Positions 1-61,372 of a DNA stretch of 64,000 nucleotides are shown piece after piece. Position 1 is the first letter of the stretch. The number at the start of each line of letters is the position of its first letter. The position numbers and the translations under genes were made by a program. The notes below the pieces were generated by a model. That model worked only from the letters and a program-made list of their open reading frames with translations, was not told the DNA's origin and ran no database searches. The stretch spans positions 22,258,001 to 22,322,000 of the forward strand of contig CM119374.1 in NCBI GenBank assembly GCA_051294905.1, in the 5' to 3' direction. Source of the stretch: Botryllus schlosseri (Eukaryota).

Positions 1-383
1 GATGAATGCGGTGCAAATCCAACTTGGCCTTTCACAGAATACTCAAGACGAATGTACGATCTGTTTTGTCGCCGTGATCATCTCGAGAGTGCTTGTTATG
101 AAGAAGTCGAAGACACTGCAAAGAGCTACAACTTCATCCAGGAACCAACCAACGGGAGCTGGAAACACCTCATCGAGACACTGGATTCGAGTCACATGCA
201 TTTCCGCGATCTCACAAAGTCGTGCATACAAGTTGCGCTGTTCGATCGCTTGGATGGCGGGCCTGGTAGATTCCATGAAGTTGTAGAGCCGTTCGCCCCG
301 TTCTGCGGACTCCAGTGGCAGGGCTACGATTACAACACGGCGCAATATCGCGATGTCTCTCCGTGGACAGGCATGAGTATATG
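1..383 (+). CDS. Ectodomain-GPCR copy 1, exon 1 (5'-truncated by window edge): C-terminal half of the Cys-rich ectodomain
   Basis: Frame 1 is open from base 1 (DECGANPTWPFTEYSRRMYDLFC...GVSPWTGMSIW-type sequence) and aligns with ORFs 6762, 44059 and 60850. Donor TG|GTACGT at 383/384 splits the Trp codon. Confidence 0.9.
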
Positions 384-1891: not shown

Positions 1892-3383
1892 GTGCCGTTC
1901 AAGCATAATAATATGCGTCCTCGTGATGGCGATAGCGGGGACCGCGACAATACTTTCCAACATCCTGATTCTGGCTGTATTTGGAACATCAGAAAGATTA
2001 CGGAATAGCCAGGCAGTTTATAAAATGTCCTTGGCCGCCGCCGACTTGATGGTGGGGTTGGTAGTTTGGCCGAATATGATTGTACTGCAATATCTGACCT
2101 TCTGGCAACCACGCGGCATGGGACCGATGATCAGAAATCCTTACCGTGAAACGAAGGATATGACACCGTACGATAACGCAAGCTTGGTGTACCGGTACGG
2201 CGGAGGCGTGTTCAGCAATATATTTCCGGATGAATATGTGCGCACAATGGGATTCTGCACCATGCTCGGTCTTATGGTGTCGATATACACTCTCATGGTG
2301 GCCAGTTTTGACCGTTTCTATGCTGTATTCAAGCCGCTTAGGTATAACCGCTTTAACGCAAAGCGACAAGCGATCATTCTTTGTGCAATTTTGTGGATCA
2401 TTTCGGTAATAGTGTGCGTATTGCCAACTTTTGTTCCTGGCTTAGTATACCAGGTGATGTCATCGATTTTGATAAATATGGAAGGATTGCCAGCGCTTGT
2501 ATTTCTCTTCGTCGCATTGTTGCTGCCACTGGTGATCACTTGGATTGTTACGTCACTCACATTTCACATGTCGCGACAACATGCCAGAGCACGCGAAAAA
2601 ATTGTGTCCGCCATATCTAGCAGCTCTCAATCATTGGAAAGGAGGCTCGCAAAAACCTTATCAATTATGGTAGGGGTATTCACTCTATCCTTGTTACCGG
2701 TAATATGCTGTACCTTAGCGGGCTTCATATCATCGAATACCGTATGGGAGCAGCCCAGAAACCTGAGCATCAGCGCTGCCACCGTATACACTACGAGTGA
2801 ATACCTGGCAATCATAATTTTGACGAGTAATAGCTTGTGGAATTGTATCATCTACAGCTTGAGAACCAGAGGCTTTCGAGAGGCGGCAGCATCCATCATG
2901 CAAGATATGGGCGAAATGTCGGGCTTTAGAAAGCTACGTCAAGGTGTTGCTAACGTGATCGATGGTGCGAGACGCGTTAGTCTTTCAACTATGATGAACA
3001 TGAGACGCTTCAGTACCCCTGATTCATCAGACTCTCGCAAAAAAAGCGTTACGTCTCTGACAGCTACGAGCAAATTCTCGGACACATCTAGTGCACGACC
3101 GAGCATGGACATTGGAGATTCGTCTGTGTTTGCAGCTTCCTCGACTGATAACACCGCCAATTCCAGATACACGAAATCCACGACAAAAGTATCGAAGACA
3201 AGTTCGGGAGTGGAAGCCAGAGCAGGGCGTAAAAAAGCTTTGAAGAAAGAAGAGAGTGAAGAATACGCGGGCGAGGACTCGACGTTTGGATCGTTTGCCA
3301 TAAATGCAGGAACTGATAGGTTGTTCGAGTCGGTAATGGAAAATGTACCGGAAGAGATCGAGATTGTTGACAGTGATGTATAG
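1892..3383 (+). CDS. Ectodomain-GPCR copy 1, exon 2: rhodopsin-class 7TM domain plus long Ser/Thr-rich C-tail
   Basis: Acceptor TTTTTCTAG|G at 1891/1892 gives in-frame W-C-R-S-S-I-I-I-C-V-L-V-M-A-I. Seven hydrophobic segments with SN (TM1), LAAAD (TM2), DRF (TM3), W (TM4), LP (TM5), LLP (TM6) and NSLWNCIIY (TM7). Stop at 3381-3383. Confidence 0.93.
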
Positions 3384-5433: not shown

Positions 5434-6821
5434 CGCTAGACGAATTTCGTGGCTTATCAGTAGGAATGTGACTGTCAGTGCCTAGCTACAGCGATACGAC
5501 TATGACTAATGACTATATGCAAAACAATAAACCCGCGTGTTTTGTCGAAATTAGTACTAACCAATACGGAGAGGACATATCTCAAATTACAAATTCGCCG
5601 CAAATTTGATTCTATCACAACCCCAAAGCGAAGATTTAAAATGATAAGTTTTCCAAAGCACAGATGCAACCAATCACGTATCCGTGCCGTCGGTCCGTAT
5701 GCACATGGCCTATTGCATGAACCATTGAGATTCCGTGCACTAATAGCGTGGCCCACGCACTAAATTGAGTGACTGCGACTTATCTATCTTGGAAAAGCAA
5801 ACGTGGCAACACATTCTACCATATCCAAGCACTAGTAACATGCAAACATCATATGGTGCTATCACATAAACTGGTGATATTTTAGGTTTCATCTCACGAC
5901 AACGAAGAAGCCGCTTGGTAGTCAGTTTCGCTCTAAAGCCATCGGAAATTCAACGCAATAAGAGCCGACGTTTTATGTAGAAGCGGGTTTGACCGACTGC
6001 TCATGCCAAAGTAATATCTCCACTCTGCAAAGTCGTCAATGGATTGAATGGCAGGGTGGCACGAACATGTAACGACGCTGTCGTGTGAGTAATAACAAAT
6101 AACAGTTGGGACTGGTATGATACATTACATTGTTTAATATTTTTCTTTTTTTTTTGTCTGTATATCTTTCTAGATAATACACATCTTGCTATCGACATAT
6201 GTCATGCATTGTGTTTTGGTCAGTTTTGTGTGCAATTAATCATCGCTACAAGATGATCAGCTTTAATCGCACAATGAGTCATTTATCTGATGATACTAAA
6301 CACAATATTCTATTGAACCACATGGAAGTTGGTAATTGCCTGAGAAAAGGGAGATCACTGGGAAACCTTAGTGATCTTTCGAATTGAGTAAGTATAATTT
6401 CTCATGTCGTGAAATCGTCTGTACCTCCTCAACGTAAATTGAAATATATAAGTTCTACTGCATTTTTTATCGTAAATTACTATACTTCTCTTCTAATGTC
6501 GAGAAAGCAAATGTTTCATTTAGACTTCATATCTAATTTAGAATATTATCATATCCTAGTAAATTTTGGCCGATCTTCGATGCATTTGATTGGAGTCCAG
6601 AATGACTGACTGTGGAACTTACCTTTTTACCTTGCTCACTGCAAAGCGCGTTGCTGTTATTAATTTAGAAGATGTTATGGATTTGGTCACCTTTCTGATG
6701 CGTTGCAGAGCTTAGAACTGATTTTAATACCGCATACTTTACTAAGTTGCTATAGAGCAGCATGATCCGTCAAAAGCAGAAGGGCGGGGAGAAAGAAGAG
6801 AGAAGAATACATGGAAGGTCA

Positions 6822-7654
6822 ATGTCAAAGTTTCTTCAGATTATTACGCTCACAATGATGCTACTTTCCTACACCAATGTTTGTAAATCGGATGTTAGCG
6901 CTAGAAATGAGACAACGCCGAAGTCCATGGAAGCCATGAATCGGCTTGTAGCAACAACAGCAGGAAACCATACGAGAATCGCATCCGTAATCCTCTCAGT
7001 CCATCAGAGTCTGAACATGAATAAGTTGACGAATTCGTCGACCAAAGAACAGAAAACAGAAAGAATTATATCAACTAACAATCACTCCGATGAAGTGGAA
7101 TTAGACAGAAAAGTTTGCATGCACTTTCCAACGCCTAAAATTGAAAACAAAGAACAATGCTGTCAACTTCTTTACAAGACGTACGCAAACGTTTGGATCA
7201 ACAGGGGACGCTACCTCGTTGTTATGCTGGAACGCTTGAAAAGATGGCGTTGCAAGGAATTTGATGATGAATGCAAACGCCCGACTTGGTCTTTTAGCGA
7301 GTACACCAGGCGTATGTACGATCTGTTTTGCAACAGGAATATAGTTGAAACGACCTGCTACGCCGATATCGCTCAAGTCGCTCAGCGGTATCAATTTGTG
7401 AACGAGTTAATCATCCCCGGCGCGATGACTTGGCAAGTTTTGATTGAGAAGCTAGACTCAAGCGCGATGAAACTCGAAGACTTGGCGACACCGTGCGTAC
7501 AAGCTGCCTTATTCGACCGAGCTGACGGTGGGGTGGGGCGGTTCCACGAAATTATCGAGCCATACGCACCATTTTGCGGTCTGCAGTGGCACGGATACGA
7601 TTTTCACACGGCGCAATTTCGCGGAGTATCGCCGTGGACCGGAATGCCTTTGTG
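6822..7654 (+). pseudogene. Ectodomain-GPCR copy 2, exon 1: signal peptide, stalk and Cys-rich ectodomain (open frame; upstream in-frame ATG at 6762)
   Basis: MSKFLQIITLTMMLLSYTNVCKS signal-like segment, four N-x-S/T sequons in the stalk, 9 Cys in the domain. Donor TG|GTAAGC at 7654/7655. Gene is disabled or truncated by a stop in exon 2. Confidence 0.85.
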
Positions 7655-7953
7655 GTAAGCCTGGGTCATATTCTCGAATGATTACACTACGGTAATTTAC
7701 ATTCTCTGTTTATCTATTAAATAATCCTTCTTCTTGGCTTTATTAAATAGAAACAACGATAATGCACATCTCACACTGTTAGGTTAAAAAAAGGTGCGCT
7801 TTACAAGCCGGAAAGATTTATCACGTTACAATGACCCATACTTCAACCGTAGAAAATATTCAAATATGAATTGCTGTATTTTCGGATATTATATATTGGG
7901 AAACTTAGCCTTGGCGCTATGACTTCTGTCAGATATATATGAATCTATTTCAG

Positions 7954-9148
7954 GTGCCGATACAGCATCATGGCATGCATTGCCTTCATGGGAGTAGCAT
8001 GCATCACAACGATCCTTGGTAACATATTCATTCTGAGCGTATTCGGGACTACCGCTAAACTGCGAGACACCCAAGGCGTTTATAAAATATGTCTCGCTCT
8101 CGCCGATTTAATGATAGGACTCGCAGTGTGGCCGAATATGATTATATTGTAATATCTCACGTTCTTCAAGCCGCGACACATGGGAGAGCTCATAAAACGA
8201 CCGTATAGTCAAACTGCCAATATGACGCCTTACGACAATAGAGATCTGGTTTACCGCTACAGCGGTGGTGAATTTGGAGACGTTTACGATCAGGATTCCG
8301 TGAGTGCAATGGGATTTTTCTCACTTCTAAGCACGATTTTATCGATTTACATACTCATGTTTGCGAGCGTGGACCGATTCTGGGCCGTGTATCGACCGCT
8401 AACGTACAACCCATACGTTGCCAAACGTCGTGCTGTCAGGCTGAGCGGATTGTTATGGTTCGTGTCTGTAGTGATCGGTCTACTCCCCGTCTTCACACCT
8501 GGATTTTCGTATAAAGTCATGAGCTCTAATTTCATATTCGCTAATGGAAAACCAGCATTCATAGTGTCGGCTGGGACTGTCTTTATCCCGCTGGTAGTGA
8601 TGTGGATTCTTACCGGGATGACATATTACGCGTGTCGGAAACATAGCCTCGCGCGAAGAAAATTAATTACTTGTCAATTCGATTCCCGGAGGGATTTGGA
8701 GACTAGACTTGCTGGCACGCTATCGATAATGGTGATGGCATTTTCCATATCGTTAGTGCCGGTGATTTGCATTACCACTGTGTGGTTTACGCCTGCTATC
8801 ACAAACTGGGAGCAGCCGCGAACGCTGAGAATAAAGAATGCGACGGCGTACACTACCAGCGAATACTTGGCGATTATCGTGTTGACAAGTAACAGCTTGT
8901 GGAATTTCTTCATATACAACTGGCGGGTAAAGGAATTTCGGAATGCTGCTATTCGAATGTTTCGGGAGAGGTTCAAACCGTACGTATTGCGCCGCAGAGG
9001 CGCAAAAGTCTACCGTAATACGAAGGGTACTCGCGGGAAGAACGCTACTAACGTGGCGCTTTCAGATAACGCGGGTAACCATCAACACCCTGCGTATGAG
9101 ACGGGAATTGGACGACGGGTCTCTACCGTTACGACCCCAGCTACTTAG
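7954..9148 (+). pseudogene. Ectodomain-GPCR copy 2, exon 2: 7TM with in-frame TAA after TM2 and a shortened C-tail
   Basis: Acceptor TATTTCAG|G at 7953/7954 gives WCRYSIMACIAF. ORFs 7970-8152 and 8180-9148 are one frame separated by TAA at 8150-8152, where paralogs have CAA (Gln). Confidence 0.88.
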
Positions 9149-12100: not shown

Positions 12101-15092
12101 CATGCCCAGAAAAAGGTAGCATACTAATATTAGAAATGCATTCTTTGGGATGTGTGATGCTGGGGTCGCAAGATGTCACTAAACTCAGATTTGGGTCGCG
12201 GCCCAAAAAGTTTCAGAACCACTGCCATATCAGGACATGAGTGCATAGTAAACATGTATAGTAAGCATCATGTCGCTTGGAGGTTGTGAGTAATCATGCC
12301 CATGAATAGAAGTCGTCCGCGAAGTTTTCAAAAAGCAAAGCAACCGAACTGTGACCTATGACCATGCTTTGTCGTGGCGCGCAATTCTTGTGATACCGAG
12401 ATAAGCGCTATTGTCGTTGTTACGTGAATAATAACAAGAACCACAGAACAAACCAGTATGTTGTAACCTGATGCAGACAACGGCTGCTCATTACTGGCTA
12501 TAAATATAAAACGGTGCAATTATCGGATTAGGAGAAGAGGCGGTATCATGCACCTTGGTGACTCGGGATTGGCAATTGTACATCATGACTTTAAGTCAAA
12601 TCCTAAATTTCATAAATATGAGGTCAGTAGGTTCCCAAAAAAACAGAAGACTAAATCGAATGGTTCTTTGATCGATATCAAAACAGAATTATCATCCGTT
12701 TAATTCGTATTTTAATCTTTGTTTTCCGAAGAATACGGCTATACAAGGGACCAACGAGACAGAAATAGCATAACCCGTAGATATGTGTAAATTCGAGGCG
12801 AAAACGCCAAAAAAATATCTACATTATTATCTATTACTAGAATGTGTTGATTAATTATTACTTGATTTCTATAAATGTCAACAGCGACCTCGAGTGAGCG
12901 TATAGGTAGAATGGACGCGATGAGCATTTACAAAATCTTTTCACAAGCAATCATCCGTACGTGCAACAATCAATGTAAGCTGGGCAGGAGGCATAATTGC
13001 CCACATTGCAGCATGCACGGATCGCAAGCACGCAGTAAAAGGCTTACAGTGTAATCCTTATCGGGGTATATTTGACGGTTCAATTGAAACGGTGCTTCAA
13101 AACAATGATCATTTTACACAAGATCTTAAATCTTCACCTACTGTAGTCTAGACTATAATTTCTATAAATCATATCCTTCAACCGTTTTATGGATCGTTTC
13201 TAATGTATAAGAACCATATCTATAGCGCAGATCACATATTCTTTAATTTACATGCCCGATAACTTTTAGATATATTTTCTGAATTGAATAAGGTATGTTA
13301 TTACGGATTGTCTTGTGGCTTAGAACGTTTGTATTGTATCTTCTTGGAAAAAGAGCCATGATTACGGTGACAAACAGCTTTCTAACAATAATAATTAGAG
13401 TCCTCCATGATACGGGAATATGCTACATCCGCAATTGCAAAAATCCTTCACGTTACAGGCGGTAATCCAAGCTCGATATTGAGTGACTGCGACTTGAATG
13501 TGCTAGATTCCATGATGTCGTATATACTCAGCAATTATAGTGGAAGTTGCATTTCAATTCTTGCCGCTTCATAGCGAAGGCATTTCGCATGCATCGCGAC
13601 ATATCTATCATTATTATCAATCTGAGTATACGCATGTTGAAACTCTTGACTTCTAATGTGAACCATTGCATCCCTCAACTTACTGCCCTGCTATGAGCGA
13701 TATTGGCTTTGGTGGATTTATTGGGAGCTTTCCACTCCATTTACAAATCACACTAATAGATGGTGGGTCTTCCTTCACGGATATGGGAATTGCAATAAGT
13801 TTAGTGAGCGACCGTGGTTACGAAATCAGCATCTGTGAAATCAACGCTGTGAAAATCTATTTTCAGTTCATAGAATAGGGCCGCTGTGTTGGGTCGTTCC
13901 GTGCAGATGTGAATAAATTCGATCGTTCCTCTTTTAGACGCCGGGAGCATGTGATCAAGATCTCGTAAATGAACATTGAGCAACTCAGCTGTATGATTAC
14001 TGCTTGACATAATCACCAAAGAGGGATGATCGATTATTATAAACCAATGTCAGTCACTCAGGACACCTGTCGGTGCTATTGCAGTGGGGATTTTAATCCG
14101 TTCCTACTTCGTTTGAACAATTCGAACAGCAAATGCTTGAACGAAGCTAAGCTGTAATTTTTTTTATTGTGAATTAAACCTTATGCAATGTGGTTGATAT
14201 CACCCTATGTTGATTAAGCACCTCTTTTTGTAATGGTCTCAATCCATCGGTCTCGACTTGTAACTATAAAGTACAGATTCCGCGATCGTATGACAGGTCA
14301 ATAAAACGCATATATAAACTCGGATTCAAGTTGATGTCGGTTTGGAATTGACGAATCATCTTTATAATGAGTATGTGTCGTCATTAATTACTACATCAAA
14401 ATCACTAATGACTTCACATCAAAAGCTAAGTGATCGATCAGGATAAGTAATTGACACGCCCTTCACATCAGTAACAACCATGATCTCATTCCAACAAGTT
14501 CTGAATCAAATCGCGGACCGGTATTTATCTGGTTATAGTCAAGGTCAGGTATGTAAGATGGTGATCGACAGCCAATATGACTGCACGCCCCATTCGAAAA
14601 TATATAGGTAGGAAGGTGCATCGGTATTACATCGAGCAAAATGGCGAAGCGTAACTTATGTCCGACATTCGTCCATCGACCTATGACCAGGATGGAATTC
14701 GGGAGTAAAAGTCATTGCAACAATGAAGCGAAATCCTCATCACGTGCGGAACAAGCGTGATGTCATCAGACTTGTACGAACTCACAGTCTAGTTGATTGA
14801 CGACCAACTAACTACCGGTTTGGTTTATTGGGTAGTTCTGGTTCTAGTTAACTGTGTGTTTTGAAAAGTGAGTAGTACTAGTTCTAGTTCTATAGTTATC
14901 GTTTCGAAATTTGAAAATCCAGTATAGTTTTTGCAAGACGGGTGTCATAATGCGCGAGTAAAAACCTTTATTAGCAGGACAGACGTTTGGATCCAAACAG
15001 ATTACGGTCAGGGCCTGTCACTGTTACAACCCGCACGATATAGACACTGTCCACAGTTGGCATGAACATATCCTACTATCGTTGAACCATAC

Positions 15093-15396
15093 CGTGTGCG
15101 ATTTTCTTGATTTTTGCGATGACCTCGTCCAAGGCGGGCGGTTTCTGCTCCCGCCTCCGTTTTAAACTCCCTTTCGTGCTCCCGGTGTACTCGGCGATCA
15201 CGTCGTGCATTTTCCGCATCGCCGGCTTCGCGCAATCGCACAGCTTCATCCATTTCGGGTCCTCCCGCACGATTCTCGAAGACTTGCTGTTCTCCTCGTC
15301 TAGCATTCGTTTGTCTTTCTCTCCCGGTTTTACCCCGTTGACGCCGGAGAGTACATATGTGACTAAAACCAGTGCTATCACTTTGTGAAAAGTCAT
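15093..15396 (-). CDS. Small secreted protein / prohormone-like precursor, first coding exon (unspliced stop at 15076)
   Basis: MTFHKVIALVLVTYVLSGVNG signal peptide, then basic sites DKR, RIVR and KRRR, and a CDC motif. TATA-like element ~70 nt upstream. Probable donor G|GTATGG at 15093/15092; a phase-compatible candidate exon 2 lies at 14680-14463. Confidence 0.7.
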
Positions 15397-15464
15397 GCTG
15401 GCGCACAAACGTTGAAATTGAGTCAAAAGGCTACAGCCGTCCCACGCTGCAAAGTAGTTCTATG

Positions 15465-29300: not shown

Positions 29301-32300
29301 ATGGTGATAATTGGAATATATTCACAAGACACAGCTTAGGAAAACTGAATTTCATGGAGGCTTTGCGTGCCTAATTCCCTTGCGGCTTTATGGTGAGCGT
29401 GTGTCGGTATGCGAGCCTTGACTTTAATTGTAATGGGTTCGATGTGGATAAGAGCAATAAGCATGAATAAAATACAGTAGATTTAGATGTTTAGCCGCAT
29501 TTAAAGTGGGTTTTTATTTTCCATTGGGGTGGGTAATTTTAAGGGACTCCGTGTGTTCCAGCAGCTTTAAATCTATAATGAGTGCATACTGCACGAATCT
29601 GCTGGGATTTAGACGAAATATGGATAGGATTAGATATTTAGATTCATAAATAGGCTATGTATGTTCAATAAGGATCATTCATTGTATGTGAAAACATCCA
29701 ATGCACTCAAATTCAATCACAAGGCTTTCATAAGATTATAATGCCAACTGTGGCTTCACGTTAATTATATATTCTACAATGATTTCTTGCATTTGCCTGT
29801 TTGGTGTAACGAAATACAAGTGGCTTCTGTAAGATATATACAGCCAGAGATCAATATGTAATAGTGTCCACTGTCCATTGATATATAGAGCTTCACACAA
29901 CCAATTCGGTGTCGTGTTTGAATGTGTGAGGTACGACTGAGATTGTGATGTAATATATTGTATATCTATATCACCAATCATCCGATAGAGTGAAGGATAA
30001 CTCCTGTTACATCCATCAAACCAATATTTTGTAATTCACAAAAGAATTGTGTATTCACTAGATGCAAAAGCACTCCATTTTCCGTACAAGCTCTCGCCAG
30101 TAATCAATCAAAGTCTGGAATCTCTTCAAACCTAAATAATTAAGTATACACGTACGATATCGGTGAGATTTCGTTATTTTTCAACGTTCCCCAAGTGTAC
30201 GTTTTAACTACATTCGGTTCAACGCCACAGAGTATCATTATCGATATACCTATTACAAAGGTTTTCGTGAATTAGAGAAATTGTGGCCGTGAAATGAATT
30301 GCGGAAATGCAGAATTCCTCACATACTATGATATCCTCAGAGTGAGGCATGAGTTGTCGAGAATAAGACATACCTTTATATTCTATACCCCAACAGATGT
30401 GTTGCATAACATATGTAAATCTAACAGTTACCAAACGAGATAACATCTCGCGATCGTAACAGATATCAGCGAAATTGCATAAACTTGAGAATCCTTTTTC
30501 CTAGTTTTCCCCGGGATATTGCCAAAATCTACAATTGTGACGTTTGCTGTTGTAACCGTGTGCATTGTGCGTCACCTGTAACCATATACCCCCGCAATTT
30601 TGAACATATTTGTATCGCTGGGGTTGTATTATGCTAAAATGGAAGGGTGTCACAAAATAGACGTGGTCCCCGTTTGCTTTGTCATTGTATCGCAAATCTC
30701 AGTTAGTGTAACTATAACCACCTCTTTACCAAACTTTATATCATTAGTAGGGCAATTTTTTGCAACTTTTGTAACTCTTTTTTACATTCCGGCAGATTCC
30801 TATAGATATTCGGAATTTATGTACCATAATGTTTTACGTTATTAGTAGGGATTTTATATTGCAACTTTTTGCGACACGTAGAGTAGCTTTTCCATTTTAA
30901 TCAAACATGATGTTTGAAACCACAAAGGGTAAATTTGGATTTGAATTGAAAGGAAACCGGCCTTGGTGAAGATTTTGGTCTCATGTTAAATTTCTCTAAC
31001 TGGTTTCAGGATTTCGATTTGGACCTGAAACATTTCATTTTCTTGAATTTCAATGTCATATTTTAGTTGATTTGATTACGATTAGGTTAGGATTGTGATT
31101 CAAAAACACGAAAATTCAGACCACCACCACTGGTTTCCTTATATTGGTGTAGGTCGCGTAACCATTACCATGAGACTGCAGTATATGGTATGTGTTGGGA
31201 TAATAATACAGGTATCCGGGATGAAAGGAGTGTAGGGTATTAGGATTCTGGTGGATACTTATTCTGGCGTGACTTCAGTAGCTTTCAGGCTCATTATGAC
31301 ATCGTTAACATAGATGACATCGCAATATCCTGGTCGGTATTCCAGAGAAAATGATAGATTTTTCATTGAGTAAACAGCGGGAATTACAGCACCGGGCATA
31401 GCGTAAACACGCCTGCCGTATTAACATTTTGTTCAGGTGTAAACTGATGAGTTTCCTGCTACACATAAACATGTTCTCGAGTATCTTCATAATTGCGGCA
31501 ATGGCTGTCAACAGATATCAAGTCGTCGTTTCGGGTAAGTTTGATCCTGCGTATAGATCAATTTACCATCAGCAGTTGAATTCGCGAGATAACATAAGTG
31601 ATTCATGATATTCCACGCGTCTCTTGCAATGTGATTCGTCGTCACTGGTGTAGTTTTCGGTATGAAATATACATAGGCAATTCCATAACTGTCGCACTTA
31701 AGGCCCAAACGAGATTGAACATTATTTCGCCTCAATATTCTAAGTCAAAATGTTATACAGTGGGATGTTTTAATAACGGCGACGGGGCTAATTAGGCGTC
31801 AGAAATGGCTACTGTTTGATGAATTTCTGCTAAAGGTCGATATACTTATATGTGGAAAGTCATTTGTGAAACAGCGAAGTTTGTTCTCTCAAGGGTAACT
31901 ATGTAGATATGGTACATCCGACATCTTTCCATCAGGCTGGCCATAGTCGTATGTAAAATTCGAAGACACGCCAGTGCAAAGTCCGCACAAACATACGCGC
32001 TGGTCTTGGTATAATATGCTTTCATCAATATGAAATCAGAAATAAATAATTCATATATTCTGAAACTTTGATGTATATACTGGGAGATTTATAATGGCAT
32101 ATAACTATCGTTATTTGTACCTCAACAATATATATATGCGCAGGCGCGTTGCGGAACACAGCCAAGCCAAAGAGAAAATGGGACACGATACGGTATTGCG
32201 TCATAATTTGGCTTACATCGTGCGTGCTCTCTACGCATACGCTATTTCTACGAAAAACCATGCCGCGCAAAAATCGGAACCTATGCAGGTAAGGTGTGCG

Positions 32301-35300
32301 TTCAAGATTCCAAACGCGGACATTATCAATTTCACTATACTTTTCAGTTGGGACTATCCCGACGACACCGCGGCATTTTGGTGGATTGAACATATGATAT
32401 CGCGCAATCTTGTAGCTTTCGTCATACCGTTGACAGTCATTTCGTTTTGCTACTGGAAAATCGTGGCGAAAGTGAAACACCACTCGTTCAAGGGTCGGAC
32501 GGCGGCCGGGCGCAGCAGCGTGAAGAGGGTTCGTTATAAAAAAAAATGTGAAATTGTATCGATATACTACGAGTCGTTCGCTTCTACGCCGCAGGCCCGG
32601 CACGTCACCCGGACAGTGTCGGTTTTCGTGGTTACTTTCGTGATATGCTGGCTTCCGAATCAGTTGTCGAATTTTCTTCAGAGCTTATGGCACTTTCGGT
32701 AAGTGAATGTAAACGTAAACGACTTCAGTGAAAAATTGATATTTTGTTTCCGATCTGAAAGTCGACCTCTATTTCGCGTTTCCGATAAATAATTGAATAT
32801 CTGAGACTCCCTGACAGGCTATAATGTCTTGATGGAAATTGGCAACATACGTAGGCTGTGTTCATAATACATCATTCTGTTGGAAATTTATTCAGATGCA
32901 TGTTTATAGGGAATCTATGTTTTGAAACGTATGCTTATTTTACACGTTTGATCGAGAATCGTTGTCCCCACCCCAACCCCGCTTCTGACAACCTACCTAC
33001 CGTGGGTATCGGTAACTAAAGCCCCACCCATCGTTATTGTTTTCGTTACGCCTAAATCCACGCTCTTACTACAATTTGCTTTCTTTACACAGCTTTTAGG
33101 AATGATATACGAGACGATAAACATCTAAAGCAGTGGTTCCCAACCTATTTCGAATAATCGCCCCTTATCAAGCTCGACACAAATTCTCGCCCCCCAATAT
33201 TTACGGATCGAAAAAAGAGGAAAATACGGGAAATTTATTCACCTAAAATTGATCGCTGGTGAATTGACTAAAAATAAGGTCATTTTCCCAGTAGCTGATC
33301 TGAAAACCGGTTTGCCCGTCCATTTTCAGTTTAGTTATGCATATGGCGATGTTTTTACCTAAAAAGAGAAGATTTTCACCTAAAAATCACAATTTTGACA
33401 TTTTTTGACCTTAAAAATCTTAATATATCAAAATTTTGACCTCATGTATGTAAATTAGGTGTTTTCCCGCATAATGTTAGAATTGTACTACTTATCTTCA
33501 TTTCTGGTTGGATATGTCTGTCCTTTCAAAGTAGTTTGGCCTGAAAACTTAGCTGACTTGGAAACTGACAAATTTTTACATGAAAAATCTTAATTTTAAC
33601 GAAATCTGGACCTACGAAGAATTCCAGTGGTTACATCACGCATTATGCTAGAAATAATTAAAATTTGTTGTAGTACAACGAAAGACACTTTCTTACATTC
33701 TTGGGAAGAAAGTGTCTGTCCTTACTAAGCAGCTTGCCAAGAATGGAGAAAGAACGTTCAACAGCAGCAGTTGCTGGCTGGCAACGCTGAAGTTGTGCGT
33801 ACATTGCGTGTTGCTTCATTCTGACAATGTTCTCTAGATCACATATTTTCATCGTGCGCTTCTTGGTATAAGAACCAATGCCCATACAGTTTCGCTCCAG
33901 TTAGGATATTGCGGTGCGTTGACCATAACACCATGTCAACCTAGTTGTTTCATTTGTCCGTTTATGATTCACAATTAGCAGATAATGTGGCGTCTACAAC
34001 GGTGGGCCTATAAAGTAGGCTAAAAGCTGTAAAATGTCGTATGATAATCCCACCGACAGTGCAAACATATACGATACAAACGAAATGCAGGTGGCAAATT
34101 TTTTTTGACTTGGTAAACAATTTTGGTAATAGTTTGACTAAACGCTACAAATTTGAATAAATATTTTGACATGTTAAAAACGTTGCTCTAGAATGACCTT
34201 TTTTAGTCAACTTTCGTGTCGTATGCAGAATAAGCCGTCGTCACATATATTTTCGACCGTGCTAATTAAATATATATCACAGGACTTTCTAACATTCCCC
34301 CGATCGCCCCCAATCATCCGTTGGTATTTTCACCCTTATGTTTCTCAAAATCACCCCCAGTGGGTGATATCGCCCACGTTGGTAATCACTGATCTAAAAC
34401 AAAACATTAAAATTATATGTAATTGAATAAATCAAATTGGAAATTATTAAACTAAAATCTTTCAAATATTAACACATCATTCAATTGTTCATTAAAGTTT
34501 TAAGCCTTGAAAGTCTCTTCAAATTATATGTAAAAGTGAGTAATGTGAATGCAGTGGAGTTTTTGTTACTTTATTGCGCCTACACTAACGGGTCTAAATC
34601 AACAGAAGGAACCGCGGTTATGAGTTTACTATCCCGTCGCTGATGATAAACTGTTTCGACCCTAAAGTCAACGTTTTCCATAAAAGCACAAGCCATTGTT
34701 CACGTTCTAAAATGGATTTGCCAGAATGGCTCAAATCAGCAAAGATATATCGGATTCTCTCAGACAGCCTGCTGCGCGTACTATCCGCTATATGGCGAAT
34801 TTGCAGTCACTGCGAACGCAGAATGTTATATTTGAATGTGGCCGCTCGCTGAATCAAACGTTTCGAAAAGGGCCATCGTGGTCCTTGACTGGGTACCGGG
34901 ACACGATGATGTCAGTGGTGACGAGTTGGTCGACAAAATGACTTGTCAAGCTGTCAGGACCGAGAGCGAAAATCCCCTTCCTCTGACATTTCCGAGTGAA
35001 ATTCGCCATATTGAGGCGAAAGCCAAAGTACTACAATACCGTAGAGCAGTGGTCGGGAACCTATGACTCGCGAGCCAGATATGGCTCTTCTGGGTATAAG
35101 ATATGGCTCCTTGAGAAATTTTTAATTTTGTACTTTTGTACAATATTCCAGCAACTTCTTAGCAAATTTTCATGAAGGCTACAATAATTATTGTGGTGGC
35201 AGCATAAACATGTCTTTGAGAGGTCAAGACATTGGCGTGTCGAGGGTTAGGGGCTCGTAGCGCCCTTTTTTCAACATCCCTAAATTCAAGTTGCTGTCGC

Positions 35301-39560: not shown

Positions 39561-41031
39561 TCATGTTGAACCCTCCGCATGCCTCGAGGTTTCCATATAT
39601 TCAGTCAAGTTACTCATAACGGATTGGTAGAGGTCTGCAGTATTAGCGCTGATGACAAACGATCCGAATGCCGTGCTACGTCGTCCACGTGTCTCCGGCA
39701 CACTAGTCACAGTAGGTGACTGATACCATCTTGTGTTACACGATTTTGGGAGTCGTCGTCTGTCATACTTCGACTGCGCATCGTCATCACGCGCTATTTC
39801 ACAAACTGAATCCTCGGTGATCATACGGTCCGAGGTACAAGGTCCGTCTACGTGCGACTCTGCCATCTCCAAGTAGTCACTGTGCGGCTCAGACGCGGGA
39901 AGTTGGCGGCTAGTCGAGTTATTTGAACGTACCACGTTAATAGCGATCTTCCGATAACCACCATGCGTGTTATTGGAGGGATTTGCGACACCGCGGCGCA
40001 GTATGCACGGTGTGAACCTCTCCCGAAACATCCTAAGTGCAGCCTTCCGAAATTCTTTCACCCGCCAATTGTAGATGAAGAAATTCCATAAGCTGTTACT
40101 TGCTAACATGATAATCGCCATGTATTGGCTTGTGGTGTACGCCGCCGCACGACTTCGACTTAGCATCCATGGCCGTTGCCAATGTGTGACAGCAGGGGTA
40201 AAACTCACGACTGTGGTGCCAATTACTGGCACCAACGATACCGAAAAGGCCATCACCATCATTGATAACGTGCTAGCAAGTCTATAGTCGAAATCCCGCC
40301 GGGAAATTGAAGGACATGTAATTATACTTCTTCTCGCGATAGCGTGTTTCCGACACATGTAGTATGTCATTCCGTTTAGGATCCACATCGTGACCAGTGG
40401 TATAAGGAGAGTTCCAGACACTATGAATGCTGCGTCTCCTTCAGCGAATATGAAATTAGAGCTTGTGACTTTATACGAGAACCCTGGGATGAAAATGGGG
40501 AGTAGACACAACACTATGCACACGAACCATAACAAAACGTTTAATCTGACGGCGCGGCGTTTGGCGATGTATGGGTTGTATGCTAGCGGTCTGTACACAG
40601 CCCAAAATCGATCTACGCTCGCAGACATGAGTATGAAAATCGACAATATAACGCCTGGTAGAGAGAAAAATCCCATTGCGATCACAAAGTGATTATCGTA
40701 AATTTCTCCACGTTCACCACCGCTGTAGCGATAAACCAAATCTGCATTGTCGTAAGGTGTCATATTAGCAGTTCGTATGTACGGCCGCATGATGACCGCT
40801 CCCATGTGTCTCGGCTTGAGGAACGTGAGATATTGTAATATAATCATATTCGGCCACAGCACGACTCCTATCATTAGATCGGCGAACGCGAGGGATATTC
40901 TGTAAACGCCTTGGGTGTTTCGCAGTTTAGCTGTGGTCCCGAATACGCAGATAATGAATACGTTTCCAAGGATCGTTGTGATGCATGCCGCTATCATGAA
41001 GGCAATGCATGCGATGATGCTGTGTCGGCAC
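39561..41031 (-). CDS. Ectodomain-GPCR copy 3, exon 2: intact 7TM plus C-tail (spliced product 772 aa)
   Basis: Acceptor GTATTTTAG|G at 41032/41031 gives WCRHSIIACIAF. Motifs GN, LAFAD, DRF, SLVP and NSLWNFFIY. Exon lengths 848+1471 nt = 773 codons including the stop. Confidence 0.93.
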
Positions 41032-41502
41032 CTAAAATACATTCATATGTGTCTAACATGAGTCAGTCCATTACGACTTCGTTCCCCGTTATATTGCGCA
41101 TAATTTATTCGTTCTAGAGCAGTGCTGGCAATTCGTGACTGGATTCGAATTGGAACCACGGGTTGAATCCTAACTTACCTTTCGTAATGATCAACGTAAG
41201 AAGTGCACTTGGCTTAACAGCAGGTTAAATTTTGATGTGGGAATACTGTAACCTGGTTCGATAGACGGAAATCATGTATTCAATCTATTTCCACCATAGA
41301 ACGGGGTTGCAATCAGTCCAATAGCACTCTCAGGTACAAGATATTGCTCACACACCCATAGTATCATCAGCGACAATGAACCAAATACGTCAGCTACGGA
41401 ATAAAAATGGAAAATATTGGCCTGGTGCAAATGACCAAAGTAGTTCACAAACAAAATTAATACCACAAACAACAGCAACTGCAATTCATATGAGAGTATA
41501 TC

Positions 41503-42771: not shown

Positions 42772-43211
42772 ATCCTATGGGCCAGTCATGGAATCTGGCT
42801 ACGTGTAACATCTTTTGGGGTGGTATGCGTCAACGCTCTTCGAGCTATTCCGGGATGGGACACCTTTCCACCTTTACACAACAGCTAAGCACTGAAATGC
42901 TGATGATTACAAAAGGTCAAGACTCTTTCCCAGTCCTAATATCCCGCCGTTACTAGTATCGCCGCGGCTGACTAAGAGCTGCAAGCTTAAATGTGCCCTA
43001 TAGTCGCGGTGTCTGGTAGGCCTACGTACGCGCTACACATGACCCGGTTGAAGTGCACTGGAATACGTACTCTTTTCGCTATCATTGTGTCAAGCGCATG
43101 ATCGTAGTTTATAGTAAATCCCTAACACAACTTATGCTTGATAGATAAAAAAAAAGTTATATACTGTAAGTTAACGTTTTCTATCCATTCGAGAATATTC
43201 TATGCTCTTAC

Positions 43212-44059
43212 CAGGAAGGCATCCCCATCCAAGGCGACACTCCGCGATATTGCGCTGTTTGCAAATCATATCCTTGCCACTGTAGACCGCAAAATGGTGC
43301 GTACGGTTCGATAATTTCGTGGAACCGTCCGACTCCCCCATCGCTTCGATCGAATAAAGCCGCTTGTACGCATGATTTAACCAAGTCTTCAAGTTCCATC
43401 GCGCTTGAGTTTAGCTTCTCAATCAAAACCATCCAAGTCATGGCGCCTGGAAAGAGTGATTCGTTCACAAATTGATATCGTCGAGCGACGTGTACGATAT
43501 CGGCGTAACATGCCGTTTCAACTTTACTTCGGTTGCAAAACAGATCGTACATACGCTTGGTGTATTCGCTAAAAGACCAAGTCGGGCGTTTGCACTCATC
43601 TTCAAATTCCTTGCAACGCCATCTATTCAAGCGTTCCAACATGACAACGAGATAGCGTCCACCGTTGTTCCAATCGTTTACGTACGTCTTGTAAACATGT
43701 TGACAACACTTGTCTTTGTAATCAATATTCGGCGTTGGAAAGTATGTGCAGACGTTTCCATCAAATTCCAATTCCTCTTGGTAATGAGTCTTCGATTTAT
43801 TTCGCTCTGTTGTCGGTTCTCTGGTCGATGAATTCATGAACTCCTTCGAGTTAGGACTTTGATGGGTTGACAGGAATGAGGTTGCGATTTGCGCATGGCT
43901 TCCTGCTCGCGCTGCAACAAGCCGACTGATGTCTTCCACGGACTTTGTTTTTGACGCCTTTTTTGTGCTAACATCCGATTTACAAGCAATAATGTGTGAA
44001 AGTACAATCATTGTGACCGCTATAAGCTGGTGGAACCCTGACAACGATCTTCCGTGCAT
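43212..44059 (-). CDS. Ectodomain-GPCR copy 3, exon 1: signal peptide, stalk and Cys-rich ectodomain
   Basis: ORF 43208-44059 begins MHGRSLSGFHQLIAVTMIVLSHIIACKS. Donor TG|GTAAGA at 43212/43211. Confidence 0.9.
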
Positions 44060-52066: not shown

Positions 52067-54499
52067 TCACGTTCAACCCTCTGCATGCTTTGAGGTTTCC
52101 ATATATTCAGTGAAGTTACTCATAACTGATTGGTACAGGTCTGCAGTATTAGCACAGATGACAAACGATCCGAATGCCGTGCTACGTCGACCACGTGTCT
52201 GTGGCACATTAGTCGCTGTGGGTGACTGGTGCCATCTTGTATTACACGATTTCGGTAGTCGTCGTCTGTCATACTACGAATGCGAATCGTCATCACACGC
52301 TATTTCACAAACTGAATCCTTGCTGAATATGTGGTCCGATATTCAAGGTCCGTCTAAGAGCGACTCTGCCATCCCTACGTAGTCGCTGTACGGCTCCGAC
52401 ACGGGAAGTTGGGGGCTGGTCGAGTTAATTGAACATACCACGTTCATAGCGATCTTCCGATTACCACCCTGCACGTGATTGGATGGGACTTGTAACACCG
52501 CGGCGCAGTATGCACGGCTTGAACCTCTGCCGAAACATTCGAAGTGCAGCCTTCCGAAATTCTTTCACTCGCCAATTGTAGATGAAGAAATTCCATAAAC
52601 TATTAGGGGAGATGTGGTACCGATGGATCAAAAATTGCAAAATGATCCCTGGCCCTCAAATCTTCAGCCGAGAATAGCAGATCTTTTGCTGTCTCAACAC
52701 TTCGATACAAGCTCTACCTATCGCAGACATTTACATGAATATCCGCCTTTTCAAAAAATATTTATAAACGTTTAAAATTTGTTGCTCGAACGTGTCATCG
52801 GTCCCCACCCGGTGGGTCCAAAGGCACACGACCATGGGACCTATGAGACATACGCTCAAAAACTCAAATTTGTTCACTTGTTTTGTTGTGTACTATAAGC
52901 TAAGCTACAGCAAGTCAATGAAGAATGTTTCGTCGTGACCTTCAAAAATAAATTAGATTACATCAACTCAAATATTGGCATAAAATCTTGTTTTGATTTA
53001 CGCTAAAATTTACAAAATTAATGCCACATACATATTACCCGCAAATCGAGATTTTGACTTTCAAATACCTCGTAATAGCGATAAAACACCACAGGTAACT
53101 ATGATTTACAGCCTATATATATGTAGGCGAGTTTCTGTTATTAAGTGATTAGTTGGTCCATCTATTTTGCTTGATTTGTTCATGGTACCATAGGTCCCCC
53201 ACCCCATAAATATTGTAATTGACTTGAATATAGTCCACTCGAGGACGGTATTGATTAAAAAAATATGTGCCATTATATAGCCTGATACAAGCCCTATACT
53301 TCACATCAAAAATTATGGCGGGTTTGTTAGTCTGAAAGGTGATATAGAAAAATGCAAATGTCGATCCAAATTTACTTTACACCCCCTAAAACGTAAATCA
53401 TTCGTCACAGACCCCATAACTCACGCAGGTCGAATTTTTTTGCATGTGAGGAAAGATTCTGCCAGCATGCAATTGTAGACAAATTCACGGAATGTAATCA
53501 TGGAATTATCATGGAGAATTTTTCAAGTATTTTCGGTTCCAGTGATCCATCGGTACCACATCTCCCCTACTTGTTAACATGAAAAACGCGACGTACTCGC
53601 TTGTAGTGTTCGCCGCTGCACTTTTTGTATTAATCGTCTGCGGTCGTTGCCAATTGGTGCCAGCAGGTGTATAGATCAGCACGACATTGCAAATCGCCGG
53701 CACCACCGATACCGAAAATGCCACAACCATCATCGATAGCGTGCGAGCAAGTGTGTTATCCGAATCCTGTCGGGAATCTGAGGGACTAATTATCCTTCTT
53801 CGCGCTATAGCGTGTTTCCGATATACGAAATATGTCGTTGCTGTTAGGATCCATACGATGACCAGCGGGATAATGGGAGTTACCAACGCTATCCATTTCG
53901 CGTTTCCACTGACGGATATGAAATTAGAGCTCACGACTTTATACGAGCTTCCTGGGATGACAACAGGAAGTAGACATAGCACTATGCACACGAACCATAA
54001 CGATACGTTTACTCTTTCGGCGCGACGTTTGGCAACGTATGGGTTGTATTCTAGCGGTCTGGACACGGCCCTAAATCGATCTACGCTCGCGAACATCAGT
54101 ATGAAAATAGACAATATTATGCCTGATACAGAGAAAAATCCCATTGCGATCACAAAGTGATTAGCGTAAATTTCTCCACGTTCACCAGCGCTGTAGCGGT
54201 AAACCAAATCTCCATTGTCGTAAGGAGTCATATTGGCAGTCATTCTATACGGCCGCTTGATGACTGCTCCCATGTGCCTCGGCTTGAAGAACGTGAGATA
54301 TTGTAATATAATCATATTCGGCCATACCACGACTCCTATCAATAAATCGGCAAAAGCGAGGGACATTTTATAAACGCCCTGGGCATCTCGCAGTTTAGCT
54401 GTAGTTCCGAATACGCACAGAATGAGTATGTTACCGAAGATCGATGTGATGCATGCTACTCCCATGAAGGCAATGCCTGTTATGATGCTGTGTCGACAC
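52067..54499 (-). pseudogene. Ectodomain-GPCR copy 4, exon 2: 7TM split in TM7 by a 962-bp MITE, plus a +1 frameshift in the tail
   Basis: Acceptor ATATTTTTAG|G at 54500/54499 gives WCRHSIITGIAF. Homology to copy 3 stops at LTS (53570), resumes at NSLWNFFIY (52605) and runs to ~52067. One extra base near 52484 relative to copy 3. Confidence 0.92.
52606..53567. mobile_element. 962-bp MITE with TA duplication (Tc1/mariner-superfamily-like) inserted in TM7 of copy 4
   Basis: Perfect 25-bp TIR GGGGAGATGTGGTACCGATGGATCA; TA on both sides (52604-5 and 53568-9). Removing the element and one TA restores LTSNSLWN. Confidence 0.95.
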
Positions 54500-59948: not shown

Positions 59949-60796
59949 CAGGAAGGCATCCCGGTCCATGGCGATACTTCGCGAAATTGCGCCGTGTGGA
60001 AATCATACCCGTGCCACTGTAGACCGCAAAATGGTGTGTACGGCTCGATAATCTCGTGGAACCGCCCGACACCCCCGTCGCGTCGATCGAATAAGGCAGT
60101 TTGTACGCATGATTTCACCAAGTCCTCAAAAGCCATCGCGCTTGAGTCTAGCTTCTCAATCAAAACCCGTCAAGTCATCACTCCCGAAATGAAAGACTCA
60201 TTAACAAATTGATATCGTCGAGCGACGTCTGTGATATCGCCGTAACATGCCGTCTCAACTTTACTTCTGTTGCAAAACAAATCGTAGATTCGCCCCGTGT
60301 ATTCACTAAATGACCAAGTCGGGCGTTTGCATTCATCATCAAATTCCTTGCAACGCCATCTTTTCAAGCGTTCCAAAATGACAACGAGATAGCGTCCCCT
60401 GTTGATCCAATCGTTTGCGTACGTCTCGTAAAGATGTCGGCAACAGTTGTCTTTGTATTTGTTATTCGGCGTTGGAAAGTTTGTGCAAACGTTTCCATCA
60501 AATTCCAATCCATGGGGGTTATTGGTCGTTGATTTATTTCGCTCCGTTGTCTTTTCTCTGGTCGATGATTTCGTGAACTTCTTCGAACCCGGACTTAGAG
60601 GGTTTGCGAAGTGTGCGGTTGCGTGTCGCACATGGTAATCTACTGGCGTTACGACAACTCGATTCATGTTTTCCGTGGACGTTGGTGCTGACTCATTTCT
60701 AGTGCTAACATCCGATTTACAAACATGGATGCACGAAAGTAATATCGTTGTGACCGCTATAATCTGGTGGAACTCTGACAACGCCCTTCCACGCAT
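59949..60796 (-). pseudogene. Ectodomain-GPCR copy 4, exon 1, with TGG>TGA nonsense codon (upstream in-frame ATG at 60850)
   Basis: ORFs 60170-60850 and 59945-60163 are one frame. TGA at 60172-60170 replaces the W of MTW seen in paralogs. Donor TG|GTGAGC at 59949/59948. Confidence 0.9.
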
Positions 60797-61372
60797 TCTT
60801 CCCTCTTCTACCTCCCCGTCGCTCTGGTTTTGTCGGATAATGCTGTTCATTAGTAAGACAACATTATATGTGGTATTAAAATTAGTTTTGAGTTTTAAAA
60901 CTTAACAGAGAGGAAACCAAATTCTCGACACCTTATTATTGACAACAACAACGCTCTAAGCAGAAAGGAGGGTTACATGGCAATAGGATATATTAAAAAC
61001 GAAAACTGAGTTATGGGTGGAAAAAGTGAATATTACATTCACAGTGAATTAGGTTCGTATATTTTCGGCAGACGCTCGTTGGGATCAATCGCGGAAACGT
61101 ATGCCTGGCCATAAGCTAAATCTAAAACCAAGTAATAGCGCGGGCCGCACAACGCCATTCGAACATGGCACTTCTTCGTGGGACTAAGAATTTTTCTGTG
61201 TGGGTCGTAGGTGTTCAACAAGAGAATATTTCAGTTGAGTACTTTTGGGCTGCCACACAATGCATTTCATAAGAGATTCATTCTACAAAATGTTGGCTAA
61301 TTGATTATAATCAGGGTGGCTACTTCGATGTTGTTTCTTAGATTCAAAAGGTATATTATAAATGGTATATCA

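What the first reader, a model, noticed from the sequence alone, without database searches (positions are those of the whole stretch)
7113..7957. A ~190-aa 10-cysteine domain whose tenth Cys is supplied by exon 2
Seen: the pattern C-x13-CC...WRC...DEC...LFC...C...C...PFC...WC is conserved across the copies (copy 1 shows only the C-terminal part). It includes near-invariant blocks such as GRYLVV(M/I)LERL, PTWxFxEYxxR(M/I)YDLFC and GRFHE(I/V)(I/V)EP(Y/F)xPFCGLQWxGYD. Exon 1 contributes nine Cys after the signal peptide; the even tenth appears only after splicing, which independently supports the fusion. The preceding stalk is much more divergent, Ser/Thr-rich and carries several N-glycosylation sequons. 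I recognise no LRR, LDLa, EGF, CUB, Ig, Frizzled-CRD or Venus-flytrap signature. Inference: a probably helical, disulfide-bonded, unnamed domain.
Basis: partly seen in the sequence, partly recalled or inferred. Interest (0 to 1): 0.8.

Follow-up and report, generated by a model that had tools for sequence, protein, structure and literature searches.

The report
Unnamed cysteine-rich ectodomain of sea-squirt peptide receptors
The stretch encodes a real, strongly conserved, roughly 190-residue disulfide-rich outer domain found only on one sea-squirt (tunicate) family of class A receptors, which includes the known Ci-LF-1 neuropeptide receptor. Its predicted fold matches nothing solved or named, and its last cysteine is the first codon of the next exon, at the top of the first membrane helix.

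Summary
All four paralogues in the window carry the Cys pattern. In each, a phase-2 intron splits a Trp codon, so Cys is the first whole codon of exon 2.

Beyond the window:
- A profile of the domain finds 155 cluster representatives. Every named one is a tunicate protein.
- The domain sits either directly before a class A 7TM (50 hits) or in an exon-1-only ORF (114 hits). It never occurs in another architecture.
- The nine exon-1 Cys are 83-100% conserved.
- Most of the family has an extra Cys pair that appears or disappears together, making 12 Cys.
- The pre-TM1 Cys is present in 30 of 31 full-length relatives.

The AlphaFold model is confident (pLDDT 94) and consists of about nine main helices plus one beta-hairpin. 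It has no neighbour in PDB, AlphaFold DB or the ESM Atlas other than family members. None of the 99 members scanned has a meaningful Pfam hit.

The family is not orphan. One member is the deposited Ci-LF-1 receptor of Ciona (Shiraishi 2019), but that paper never mentions the ectodomain.

Co-loss of cysteines suggests that the exon-2 Cys bonds to the Cys of the PFC motif in the hairpin, stapling the domain to TM1.

Two caveats apply. The copy at the given coordinates has an in-frame TAA in exon 2 and may be a pseudogene. No RNA read spanned the junction.

The scan had already flagged this family on other DNA of this genome.

The parts
7113..7654 (+). Copy 2: exon-1 part of the Cys-rich ectodomain (nine Cys), up to the TG of the split Trp codon
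6762..7112 (+). Copy 2: start codon, signal peptide and divergent, glycosylation-sequon-bearing stalk
   Evidence: stalk 45% identity, dN/dS 0.8-1.55
7655..7953 (+). Copy 2: phase-2 intron (GTAAG...TTTCAG)
7954..7957 (+). Copy 2: the G that completes Trp, plus the TGC of the tenth Cys (first full codon of exon 2)
7958..9148 (+). Copy 2: class A 7TM exon, with an in-frame TAA at 8150-8152 (Gln in copy 3)
1..383 (+). Copy 1: C-terminal two thirds of the ectodomain (cut by the window edge), donor at 384
1892..3383 (+). Copy 1: exon 2 (Cys codon 1893-1895, 7TM, long C-tail), intact
43212..44059 (-). Copy 3: exon 1 (signal peptide, stalk, ectodomain from Cys codon 43750-43748), intact
39561..41031 (-). 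Copy 3: exon 2 (Cys codon 41030-41028, 7TM, C-tail), intact. Pfam 7tm_1 E 5.6e-19
59949..60850 (-). Copy 4: exon 1 with an in-frame TGA at 60172-60170 (Trp in the other copies)
53509..54499 (-). Copy 4: exon 2 (Cys codon TGT 54498-54496). The frame is lost inside TM7, so this is a probable pseudogene

Best explanation
What is shown. The stretch encodes a genuine, undescribed protein domain. It is the N-terminal ectodomain of a tunicate-restricted class A GPCR family. That family includes the experimentally deorphanised Ci-LF-1 neuropeptide receptor of Ciona.
- The domain is always the first structured module after a signal peptide and a fast-evolving glycosylated stalk.
- It is followed by TM1 with no linker.
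- It is predicted with high confidence as a compact bundle of about nine main helices plus one beta-hairpin, with no detectable structural relative.
- Its cysteine columns are conserved family-wide.
- The last Cys is encoded by the first codon of exon 2 and lies in the first turn of the TM1 helix.

What is inferred from co-loss and gain patterns. The cysteines form five disulfides in the window's clade and six in most of the family.
- C1 pairs with one Cys of the CC doublet.
- The other Cys of the doublet pairs with the WxC Cys.
- Two bonds form among the four invariant central Cys; these are unresolved.
- The PFC Cys of the hairpin pairs with the exon-2 Cys.
- The optional pair (W-C-G in the hairpin strand and W-x-C in the tail) lies in antiparallel register beside that last bond.
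- Together these bonds would staple the ectodomain rigidly onto the top of TM1.

What is inferred about function. The most conserved face (the helix PC-x-Q-x-A, the hairpin hE...PFC...W-x-G and the tail S-x-W) is the membrane-proximal one. It probably forms a lid and the outer wall of the binding site for a short peptide ligand over a 7TM that lacks the usual TM3-ECL2 disulfide. The ligand of the window's own receptors is unknown.
For: Family and architecture:
- A profile search found 155 representatives, 112 of them at E up to 1e-10.
- 50 hits are domain plus 7TM, 114 are exon-1-only ORFs (most ending 0-6 residues after the profile end), and none has another architecture.
- The named members come from Styela, Clavelina, Ciona, Phallusia and Botryllus.
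- The 90% cluster of P0101 contains 'Ci-LF-1 receptor' (BBC53701.1, A0A1W5B9R1).
- BLASTP of the window ectodomain against that protein gives E 1e-23; the 7TM gives E 4e-43, with the alignment starting at the shared Cys.
- Ci-LF-1 activates that receptor at 5.25 nM (PMC6475428).

Fold:
- Ectodomain model: pLDDT 94.4, pTM 0.88.
- Full-length model of the closest full-length relative: pLDDT 87.8, pTM 0.84. TM1 starts at model residue 193 and the Cys is residue 195.
- No fold match and no Pfam hit.

Cysteines:
- Column conservation.
- The extra pair is present together in 70 sequences, absent together in 27 and split in 2.
- No Cys column in the 7TM part exceeds 45%.
- Three genes that lack the PFC Cys (L002, L003, L004) have Gly, Ser or Tyr at the pre-TM1 Cys position. 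They lie in at least two separate clades.
- Positions 162+189 and 167+184 give the same sum, as expected for two bonds in antiparallel register.

Constraint:
- dN/dS is 0.20-0.28 for the domain, 0.31-0.41 for the 7TM and 0.8-1.55 for the stalk.
Against:
- There are two exceptions to the PFC-Cys/exon-2-Cys co-loss. P0042 (L006) lacks the PFC Cys but keeps the exon-2 Cys. P0086 keeps the PFC Cys but lacks the last Cys. Either may be a degraded gene or a wrong gene model.
- No RNA read or contig spans the exon 1-exon 2 junction in this species.
- Among the recent paralogues the ectodomain is more conserved than the 7TM. This argues against the ectodomain being the main determinant of ligand specificity.
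- The window clade is only 26-30% identical to Ci-LF-1-R and is not its orthologue, so a peptide ligand is an extrapolation.
- Copies 2 and 4 carry stop codons.
Confidence: 0.65

Rival explanations
1. The domain is a very diverged member of a known helical cysteine-rich fold (Frizzled/Smoothened CRD, GFR-alpha/GAS1, a saposin-like or folate-receptor-like fold) that the searches missed.
For: It has ten cysteines, is mostly helical and sits on a 7TM, as in class F receptors. The makers of VIA-align warn that helical folds often score low.
Confidence: 0.07
2. The ectodomain does not bind ligand. It is a structural cap needed for folding or trafficking, or a tethered modulator (agonist or inverse agonist) held on TM1, and the peptide binds only in the 7TM pocket.
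For: The domain is under stronger purifying selection than the 7TM among the recent paralogues. There is no linker to TM1. The known ligands are very short peptides active at nanomolar level (PMC6475428), which could fit entirely in a 7TM pocket.
Against: Nothing here speaks directly against it. Variable segments (N-terminus, residues 82-131, 171-176) leave room for specificity surfaces. The family-wide retention of about 190 residues and 5-6 disulfides is costly for a mere cap.
Confidence: 0.25
3. The exon-2 Cys is not part of the domain's disulfide set. It is free, lipid-facing, or forms an intermolecular bond, and the even count is a coincidence.
For: It lies in the first turn of TM1. There are two exceptions to the co-loss pattern. 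A further Cys near the signal-peptide cleavage site could change the parity.
Against: It is present in 30 of 31 full-length relatives. It is co-lost with the PFC Cys in three genes from at least two clades. No conserved partner exists in the extracellular loops. The CKSD Cys is not conserved outside the window's own copies.
Confidence: 0.12

Closest known systems
Ci-LF-1 receptor of Ciona intestinalis type A (KH.C4.122; BBC53701.1; Shiraishi et al. 2019, PMC6475428) and the 'urochordate LF-R clade'
   Same: Same architecture: signal peptide, this ectodomain, Cys directly before TM1, and an alpha-group class A 7TM without the TM3-ECL2 disulfide. The ectodomain matches at BLASTP E 1e-23 and the 7TM at E 4e-43. 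Both are tunicate-only.
   Different: Identity is only 26-30%. Ci-LF-1-R lacks the first Cys pair and has the extra hairpin-tail pair. It sits in a different part of the family tree. The ligand of the window's receptors is unknown. The paper does not describe the ectodomain: the words 'extracellular' and 'cysteine' do not occur in it.
Class B1 (secretin-type) GPCR extracellular domain
   Same: A disulfide-stabilised N-terminal domain on a peptide-activated GPCR. This is a possible analogy for how the domain works (two-site peptide binding).
   Different: Class B1 ECDs are about 120 residues with three disulfides and an alpha-beta-beta-alpha fold, joined to TM1 by a stalk, on a class B 7TM. Here there is no sequence or structural match, the 7TM is class A, there is no linker, and the last Cys lies in TM1's first turn.
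Frizzled/Smoothened cysteine-rich domain
   Same: A mostly helical ten-cysteine ectodomain on a 7TM receptor.
   Different: No Pfam Fz hit in 99 members and no Fz or Smo CRD among the structural matches. That domain is about 120 residues with a long linker and a class F 7TM.
N-terminal helical cap of lipid-type alpha-group receptors (S1P1, LPA1, CB1)
   Same: The 7TM is closest to alpha-group receptors such as A2A, beta-adrenergic, 5-HT2 and CB1. Like S1P1, LPA1 and CB1 (from my own knowledge) it lacks the TM3-ECL2 disulfide, and its N-terminal region sits directly on the bundle.
   Different: Those caps are a single short helix without a disulfide-rich domain. Here the cap is a module of about 190 residues with 5-6 disulfides, and the only known family ligand is a peptide.

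Membership tests
Tunicate LF-type receptor family (contains Ci-LF-1-R, Shiraishi 2019) | 7TM closer to Ci-LF-1-R than to any non-tunicate GPCR | tested here: met
   BLASTP against Ci-LF-1-R gives 30% identity over the whole 7TM, E 4e-43. The best solved non-tunicate GPCR (A2A) reaches E 1e-08. The best database hits are all tunicate.
Tunicate LF-type receptor family (contains Ci-LF-1-R, Shiraishi 2019) | Shares the N-terminal ectodomain, with a Cys directly before TM1 | tested here: met
   Ectodomain BLASTP E 1e-23, 26% identity. The junction ...C-R-x-x-(I/V) aligns.
Tunicate LF-type receptor family (contains Ci-LF-1-R, Shiraishi 2019) | Orthology to a deorphanised Ci-LF receptor | tested here: not met
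   The window copies lie in a well-supported 16-row clade with Styela proteins. P0101 (the Ci-LF-1-R cluster) lies outside it. The window genes are therefore a paralogous subfamily.
Tunicate LF-type receptor family (contains Ci-LF-1-R, Shiraishi 2019) | Activation by a short C-terminal Leu-Phe peptide | not testable with these tools
   This needs a cell-based assay such as the one in PMC6475428.
Rhodopsin-class (class A) GPCR, Pfam PF00001 | 7tm_1 profile match above the gathering score in the downstream exon | tested here: met
   Copy 3 scores 69.1 bits and copy 1 scores 90.7 bits against a cut-off of 30.5. The full-length model superposes on A2A and beta1AR with target TM 0.8.
Frizzled/Smoothened CRD (PF01392) | Profile match or shared fold | tested here: not met
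   No Pfam hit in the window copies or in 99 relatives. It is absent from the Foldseek and VIA matches.
GDNF/GAS1 (GFR-alpha) domain (PF02351) | Profile match or shared fold | tested here: not met
   Same searches.
Class B hormone-receptor domain, LDLa, LRR, EGF, CUB | Profile match | tested here: not met
   Only three single-member chance hits at E above 0.001.

The most novel reading that the evidence does not exclude
The domain is a new protein fold that arose in the tunicate stem lineage. Stapled by a disulfide to the first turn of TM1, it is an obligatory part of the peptide-binding and activation machinery of a class A GPCR. That would be an independent invention of a two-module, class-B-like peptide receptor, with a rigid rather than flexible ectodomain-7TM coupling.
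Probability: 0.3. Interest if true: 0.75.

Novelty: new variant of a known kind. Interest (0 to 1): 0.6.

Why it matters
Class A peptide receptors normally bind their ligands with loops and a short N-terminus. Here a large, rigidly attached, disulfide-rich domain of unknown fold sits on a whole expanded receptor family in the sister group of vertebrates.

At least one member has a known nanomolar peptide ligand and a working assay. The role of the ectodomain (ligand capture, lid, or tethered modulator) can therefore be tested directly.

The result also gives a name-worthy domain family for databases. Its members are currently mislabelled as cannabinoid, histamine, dopamine, S1P or thyrotropin receptor-like. 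It also gives a rule for gene prediction in tunicate genomes: exon 1 plus the 7TM exon, joined by a phase-2 intron directly before the Cys.

Tried and rejected
- The search for homologous proteins with exon 1 alone found nothing, and with the 99-sequence profile found one protein. Its word index and length window make it insensitive here, so I relied on the exhaustive HMMER search.
- The protein-atlas feature search gave only low-recognition, unrelated hits.
- RNA evidence was weak. Logan contigs of three runs and raw reads of one covered copy-3 exons at low depth. Strong depth appeared only over a repeat inside the intron, and no junction-spanning record was found. The splice is therefore supported by site consensus, by conservation and by annotated orthologues, not by reads.
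- Model coordinates are not exposed to scripts, so I could not measure disulfide distances or the ectodomain-7TM interface.
- Dataset S3 of Shiraishi 2019 is not held, and no paper maps the KH gene ids. Only Ci-LF-1-R could be tied to the family, through a database name. The other Ci-LF and Ci-YFV receptors remain unchecked.
- I considered a chemosensory, hypervariable-ectodomain reading because of the tandem clusters and pseudogenes, and ranked it lower. The ectodomain is the most constrained part of the protein, and a family member is a neuropeptide receptor.
- I found no paper that describes the domain.

Full report
**What is in the window**

The window is eukaryotic DNA of about 40% G+C. 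It holds four paralogous two-exon genes.
- Copy 1 (+): exon-1 tail 1-383, exon 2 1892-3383.
- Copy 2 (+): exon 1 6762-7654, exon 2 7954-9148.
- Copy 3 (-): exon 1 44059-43212, exon 2 41031-39561.
- Copy 4 (-): exon 1 60850-59949, exon 2 54499-53509.

A tblastn of family proteins against the window finds no further copy.

In all four copies exon 1 ends in TG followed by GT(A/G)(A/C)G. Exon 2 begins, after a pyrimidine-rich tract and AG, with G-TG(C/T)-CG. The junction therefore reads Trp-Cys-Arg across a phase-2 intron.

Copies 1 and 3 are open throughout. The other two are damaged.
- Copy 2 has an in-frame TAA at 8150-8152 where copy 3 has Gln.
- Copy 4 has an in-frame TGA at 60172-60170 where the others have Trp. 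Its 7TM frame is also lost in TM7.

The four copies share the pattern C-x13-CC, WRC, DEC, LFC, C, C, PFC and then W|C.

Between copies 2, 3 and 4:
- The domain is 79-80% identical, with dN/dS 0.20-0.28.
- The 7TM has dN/dS 0.31-0.41.
- The stalk between signal peptide and domain is 45% identical, with dN/dS 0.8-1.55 and two to four N-x-S/T sequons.

The domain is therefore the most constrained part of the protein.

**It is a family, and only in one architecture**

A profile of the window copies was searched with HMMER against 1.84 billion representatives. It found 155 proteins at E up to 0.001, 112 at up to 1e-10 and 21 at up to 1e-30.

Re-scored locally, the hits fall into two classes.
- 50 carry the domain followed by a 7TM that matches the window's 7TM.
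- 114 are short ORFs that stop a few residues after the profile end, mostly 0-6. That is what a prokaryote-style gene caller produces at a conserved exon boundary.
- None has the domain with any other partner. One weak hit, P0161, is a repeat protein and spurious.

Every member that carries a name is from a tunicate: Styela clava, Clavelina lepadiformis, Ciona intestinalis, Phallusia mammillata or Botryllus schlosseri. Their automatic names are contradictory: cannabinoid, S1P, histamine H2, D1B dopamine, thyrotropin and melatonin receptor-like.

One relative's contig (L001) shows the same intron position and phase, with Cys as the first codon of exon 2. Contigs L002-L006 show the same two-ORF layout.

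**Cysteines in the wider family**

In a 99-sequence alignment (A2) the nine exon-1 Cys columns are Cys in 82, 84, 95, 95, 99, 99, 98, 99 and 94 rows.

Two further columns correspond to positions 167 and 184 of the copy-3 domain. They are Cys together in 70 rows, absent together in 27, and split in only 2. Most of the family therefore has 12 Cys, and the window's clade is a 10-Cys variant.

The Cys before TM1 is present in 30 of 31 full-length relatives, zero to three residues before the hydrophobic helix.

No Cys column in the 7TM part exceeds 45%. So there is no conserved loop partner, and the canonical TM3-ECL2 disulfide is absent. The extracellular Cys count is even only if the exon-2 Cys is included.

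**Which Cys pairs with which (inference)**

- Sequences that lack C1 usually also lack one Cys of the CC doublet. Two that lack one doublet Cys also lack the WxC Cys. This fits two bonds: C1 to one doublet Cys, and the other doublet Cys to the WxC Cys.
- Five sequences lack the PFC Cys. For four of them I could read exon 2.
  - In L002, L003 and L004 the pre-TM1 position is Gly, Ser and Tyr.
  - In L006 it is still Cys, but that gene also lacks the N-terminal part of the domain.
- One gene model (P0086) shows the converse pattern.
- Before the L006 case, the table (30, 1; 0, 3) gave a Fisher p of 7e-4.
- In the family tree the co-losing genes lie in at least two separate clades.
- Positions 162 and 189, and positions 167 and 184, have the same sum. 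This is expected if the tail runs antiparallel along the hairpin and is bonded to it twice.
- I take PFC Cys to exon-2 Cys as the likely bond, but it is not measured.
- The four invariant central Cys cannot be paired by this kind of evidence.

**Fold**

AlphaFold2 on A2, with copy 3 as target, gives pLDDT 94.4 and pTM 0.88. The model has eleven DSSP helices of four or more residues (about nine main ones; helices at 114-119 and 128-131 are short). It also has one hairpin with strands 151-156 and 165-170.

No search found a structural relative outside the family.
- Foldseek against PDB: best E 1.1, TM at most 0.31.
- Swiss-Prot AlphaFold models: best E 0.86.
- ESM Atlas: TM at most 0.38.
- AlphaFold DB clusters: three matches, all N-termini of proteins of this family. 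They are A0A6F9DI97 (Phallusia), F6UX23, and E4YX06 at TM 0.50. From memory, the accession series of E4YX06 is that of Oikopleura dioica; I did not verify this.

Sequence-based searches agree.
- Pfam gives nothing meaningful for the window proteins or for any of the 99 members.
- PDB sequence profiles give nothing.

A full-length model of the closest full-length relative (P0023 residues 36-579, 33-row alignment A3) has pLDDT 87.8 and pTM 0.84.
- The TM1 helix starts at model residue 193 and the Cys is residue 195.
- I read the high pTM as a defined ectodomain-7TM packing. This is inference, because I could not see the error map.
- Its 7TM superposes on A2A, beta1 and other alpha-group receptors.

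**What the family does**

An earlier scan note on another cluster of this genome (s1-253979) said that some members bind short peptides. I tested this.
- The 90% cluster of P0101 (Ciona LOC104265620) contains a protein that UniRef and NCBI call 'Ci-LF-1 receptor' (A0A1W5B9R1, BBC53701.1).
- That protein aligns to the window ectodomain at E 1e-23.
- It aligns to the window 7TM at E 4e-43, with the alignment beginning at the shared Cys.

Shiraishi et al. 2019 (PMC6475428) is consistent with what I see.
- They showed that Ci-LF-1 activates this receptor (KH.C4.122) with an EC50 of 5.25 nM.
- They described a tunicate-only 'LF-R clade' 21-26% identical to cannabinoid, adenosine and adrenergic receptors.
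- They found most Ci-LF receptors expressed in the siphons.
- The paper does not contain the words 'extracellular' or 'cysteine'.

No other paper I could search describes the domain.

The window's genes are paralogues, not orthologues, of Ci-LF-1-R.

**Mechanism proposed**

Three things are shown:
- a conserved, constrained, disulfide-rich module;
- no linker to TM1;
- membership of a family with a peptide-activated member.

The rest is inferred. The membrane-proximal elements are the most conserved. They are the helix PC-x-Q-x-A, the hairpin with the nearly invariant Glu and the PFC...W-x-G motif, and the tail S-x-W. The N-terminus and the segments 82-131 and 171-176 vary. I therefore propose that the conserved face is stapled to TM1 and lies over the 7TM opening as a lid and outer wall of a peptide site.

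The main rival is a non-binding cap or tethered modulator. It is favoured by the fact that the ectodomain evolves more slowly than the 7TM.

**Novelty**

- The receptor family is known in part.
- The ectodomain as a domain family and fold is, as far as these searches reach, undescribed.
- The scan had already noted the same family on other pieces of this genome and next to this window.

Noticed in passing
window 8150-8152; 60170-60172; 53509-53560: Copy 2 has an in-frame TAA (Gln in copy 3) near the end of TM2. Copy 4 has an in-frame TGA (Trp elsewhere) inside the ectodomain and loses its frame in TM7. So two of the four paralogues look like recent pseudogenes, or strain-specific null alleles.
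   Followed up: partly
window 41500-42900 (intron of copy 3): RNA-library contigs pile up here at up to about 1,800-fold word depth with many loose ends, while the flanking intron has none. This looks like a transcribed high-copy repeat inserted in the intron.
   Followed up: no
window 15076-15426 (-): A 116-residue ORF with a signal-peptide-like start and several dibasic sites lies inside the receptor cluster. It would be worth testing as a candidate ligand precursor.
   Followed up: no
window 32094-32702 (+): This ORF has TM5-TM6-like text of another class A GPCR (a C-W-L-P motif) and no similarity to the four copies. It may be an unrelated receptor gene or a fragment.
   Followed up: no
L004 and L005 (ocean metagenome contigs; L004 is a TARA record): A family member with an intron of only about 100 bases lacks both the PFC Cys and the pre-TM1 Cys. 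It comes from marine metagenomes (L004 from TARA) and presumably belongs to a pelagic tunicate.
   Followed up: partly
P0055, P0059, P0081, P0127, P0143 (database names): Members of this family are auto-named histamine H2, cannabinoid 1B-like, D(1B) dopamine-like, thyrotropin-like and S1P3-like receptors. The names are mutually inconsistent and misleading.
   Followed up: no
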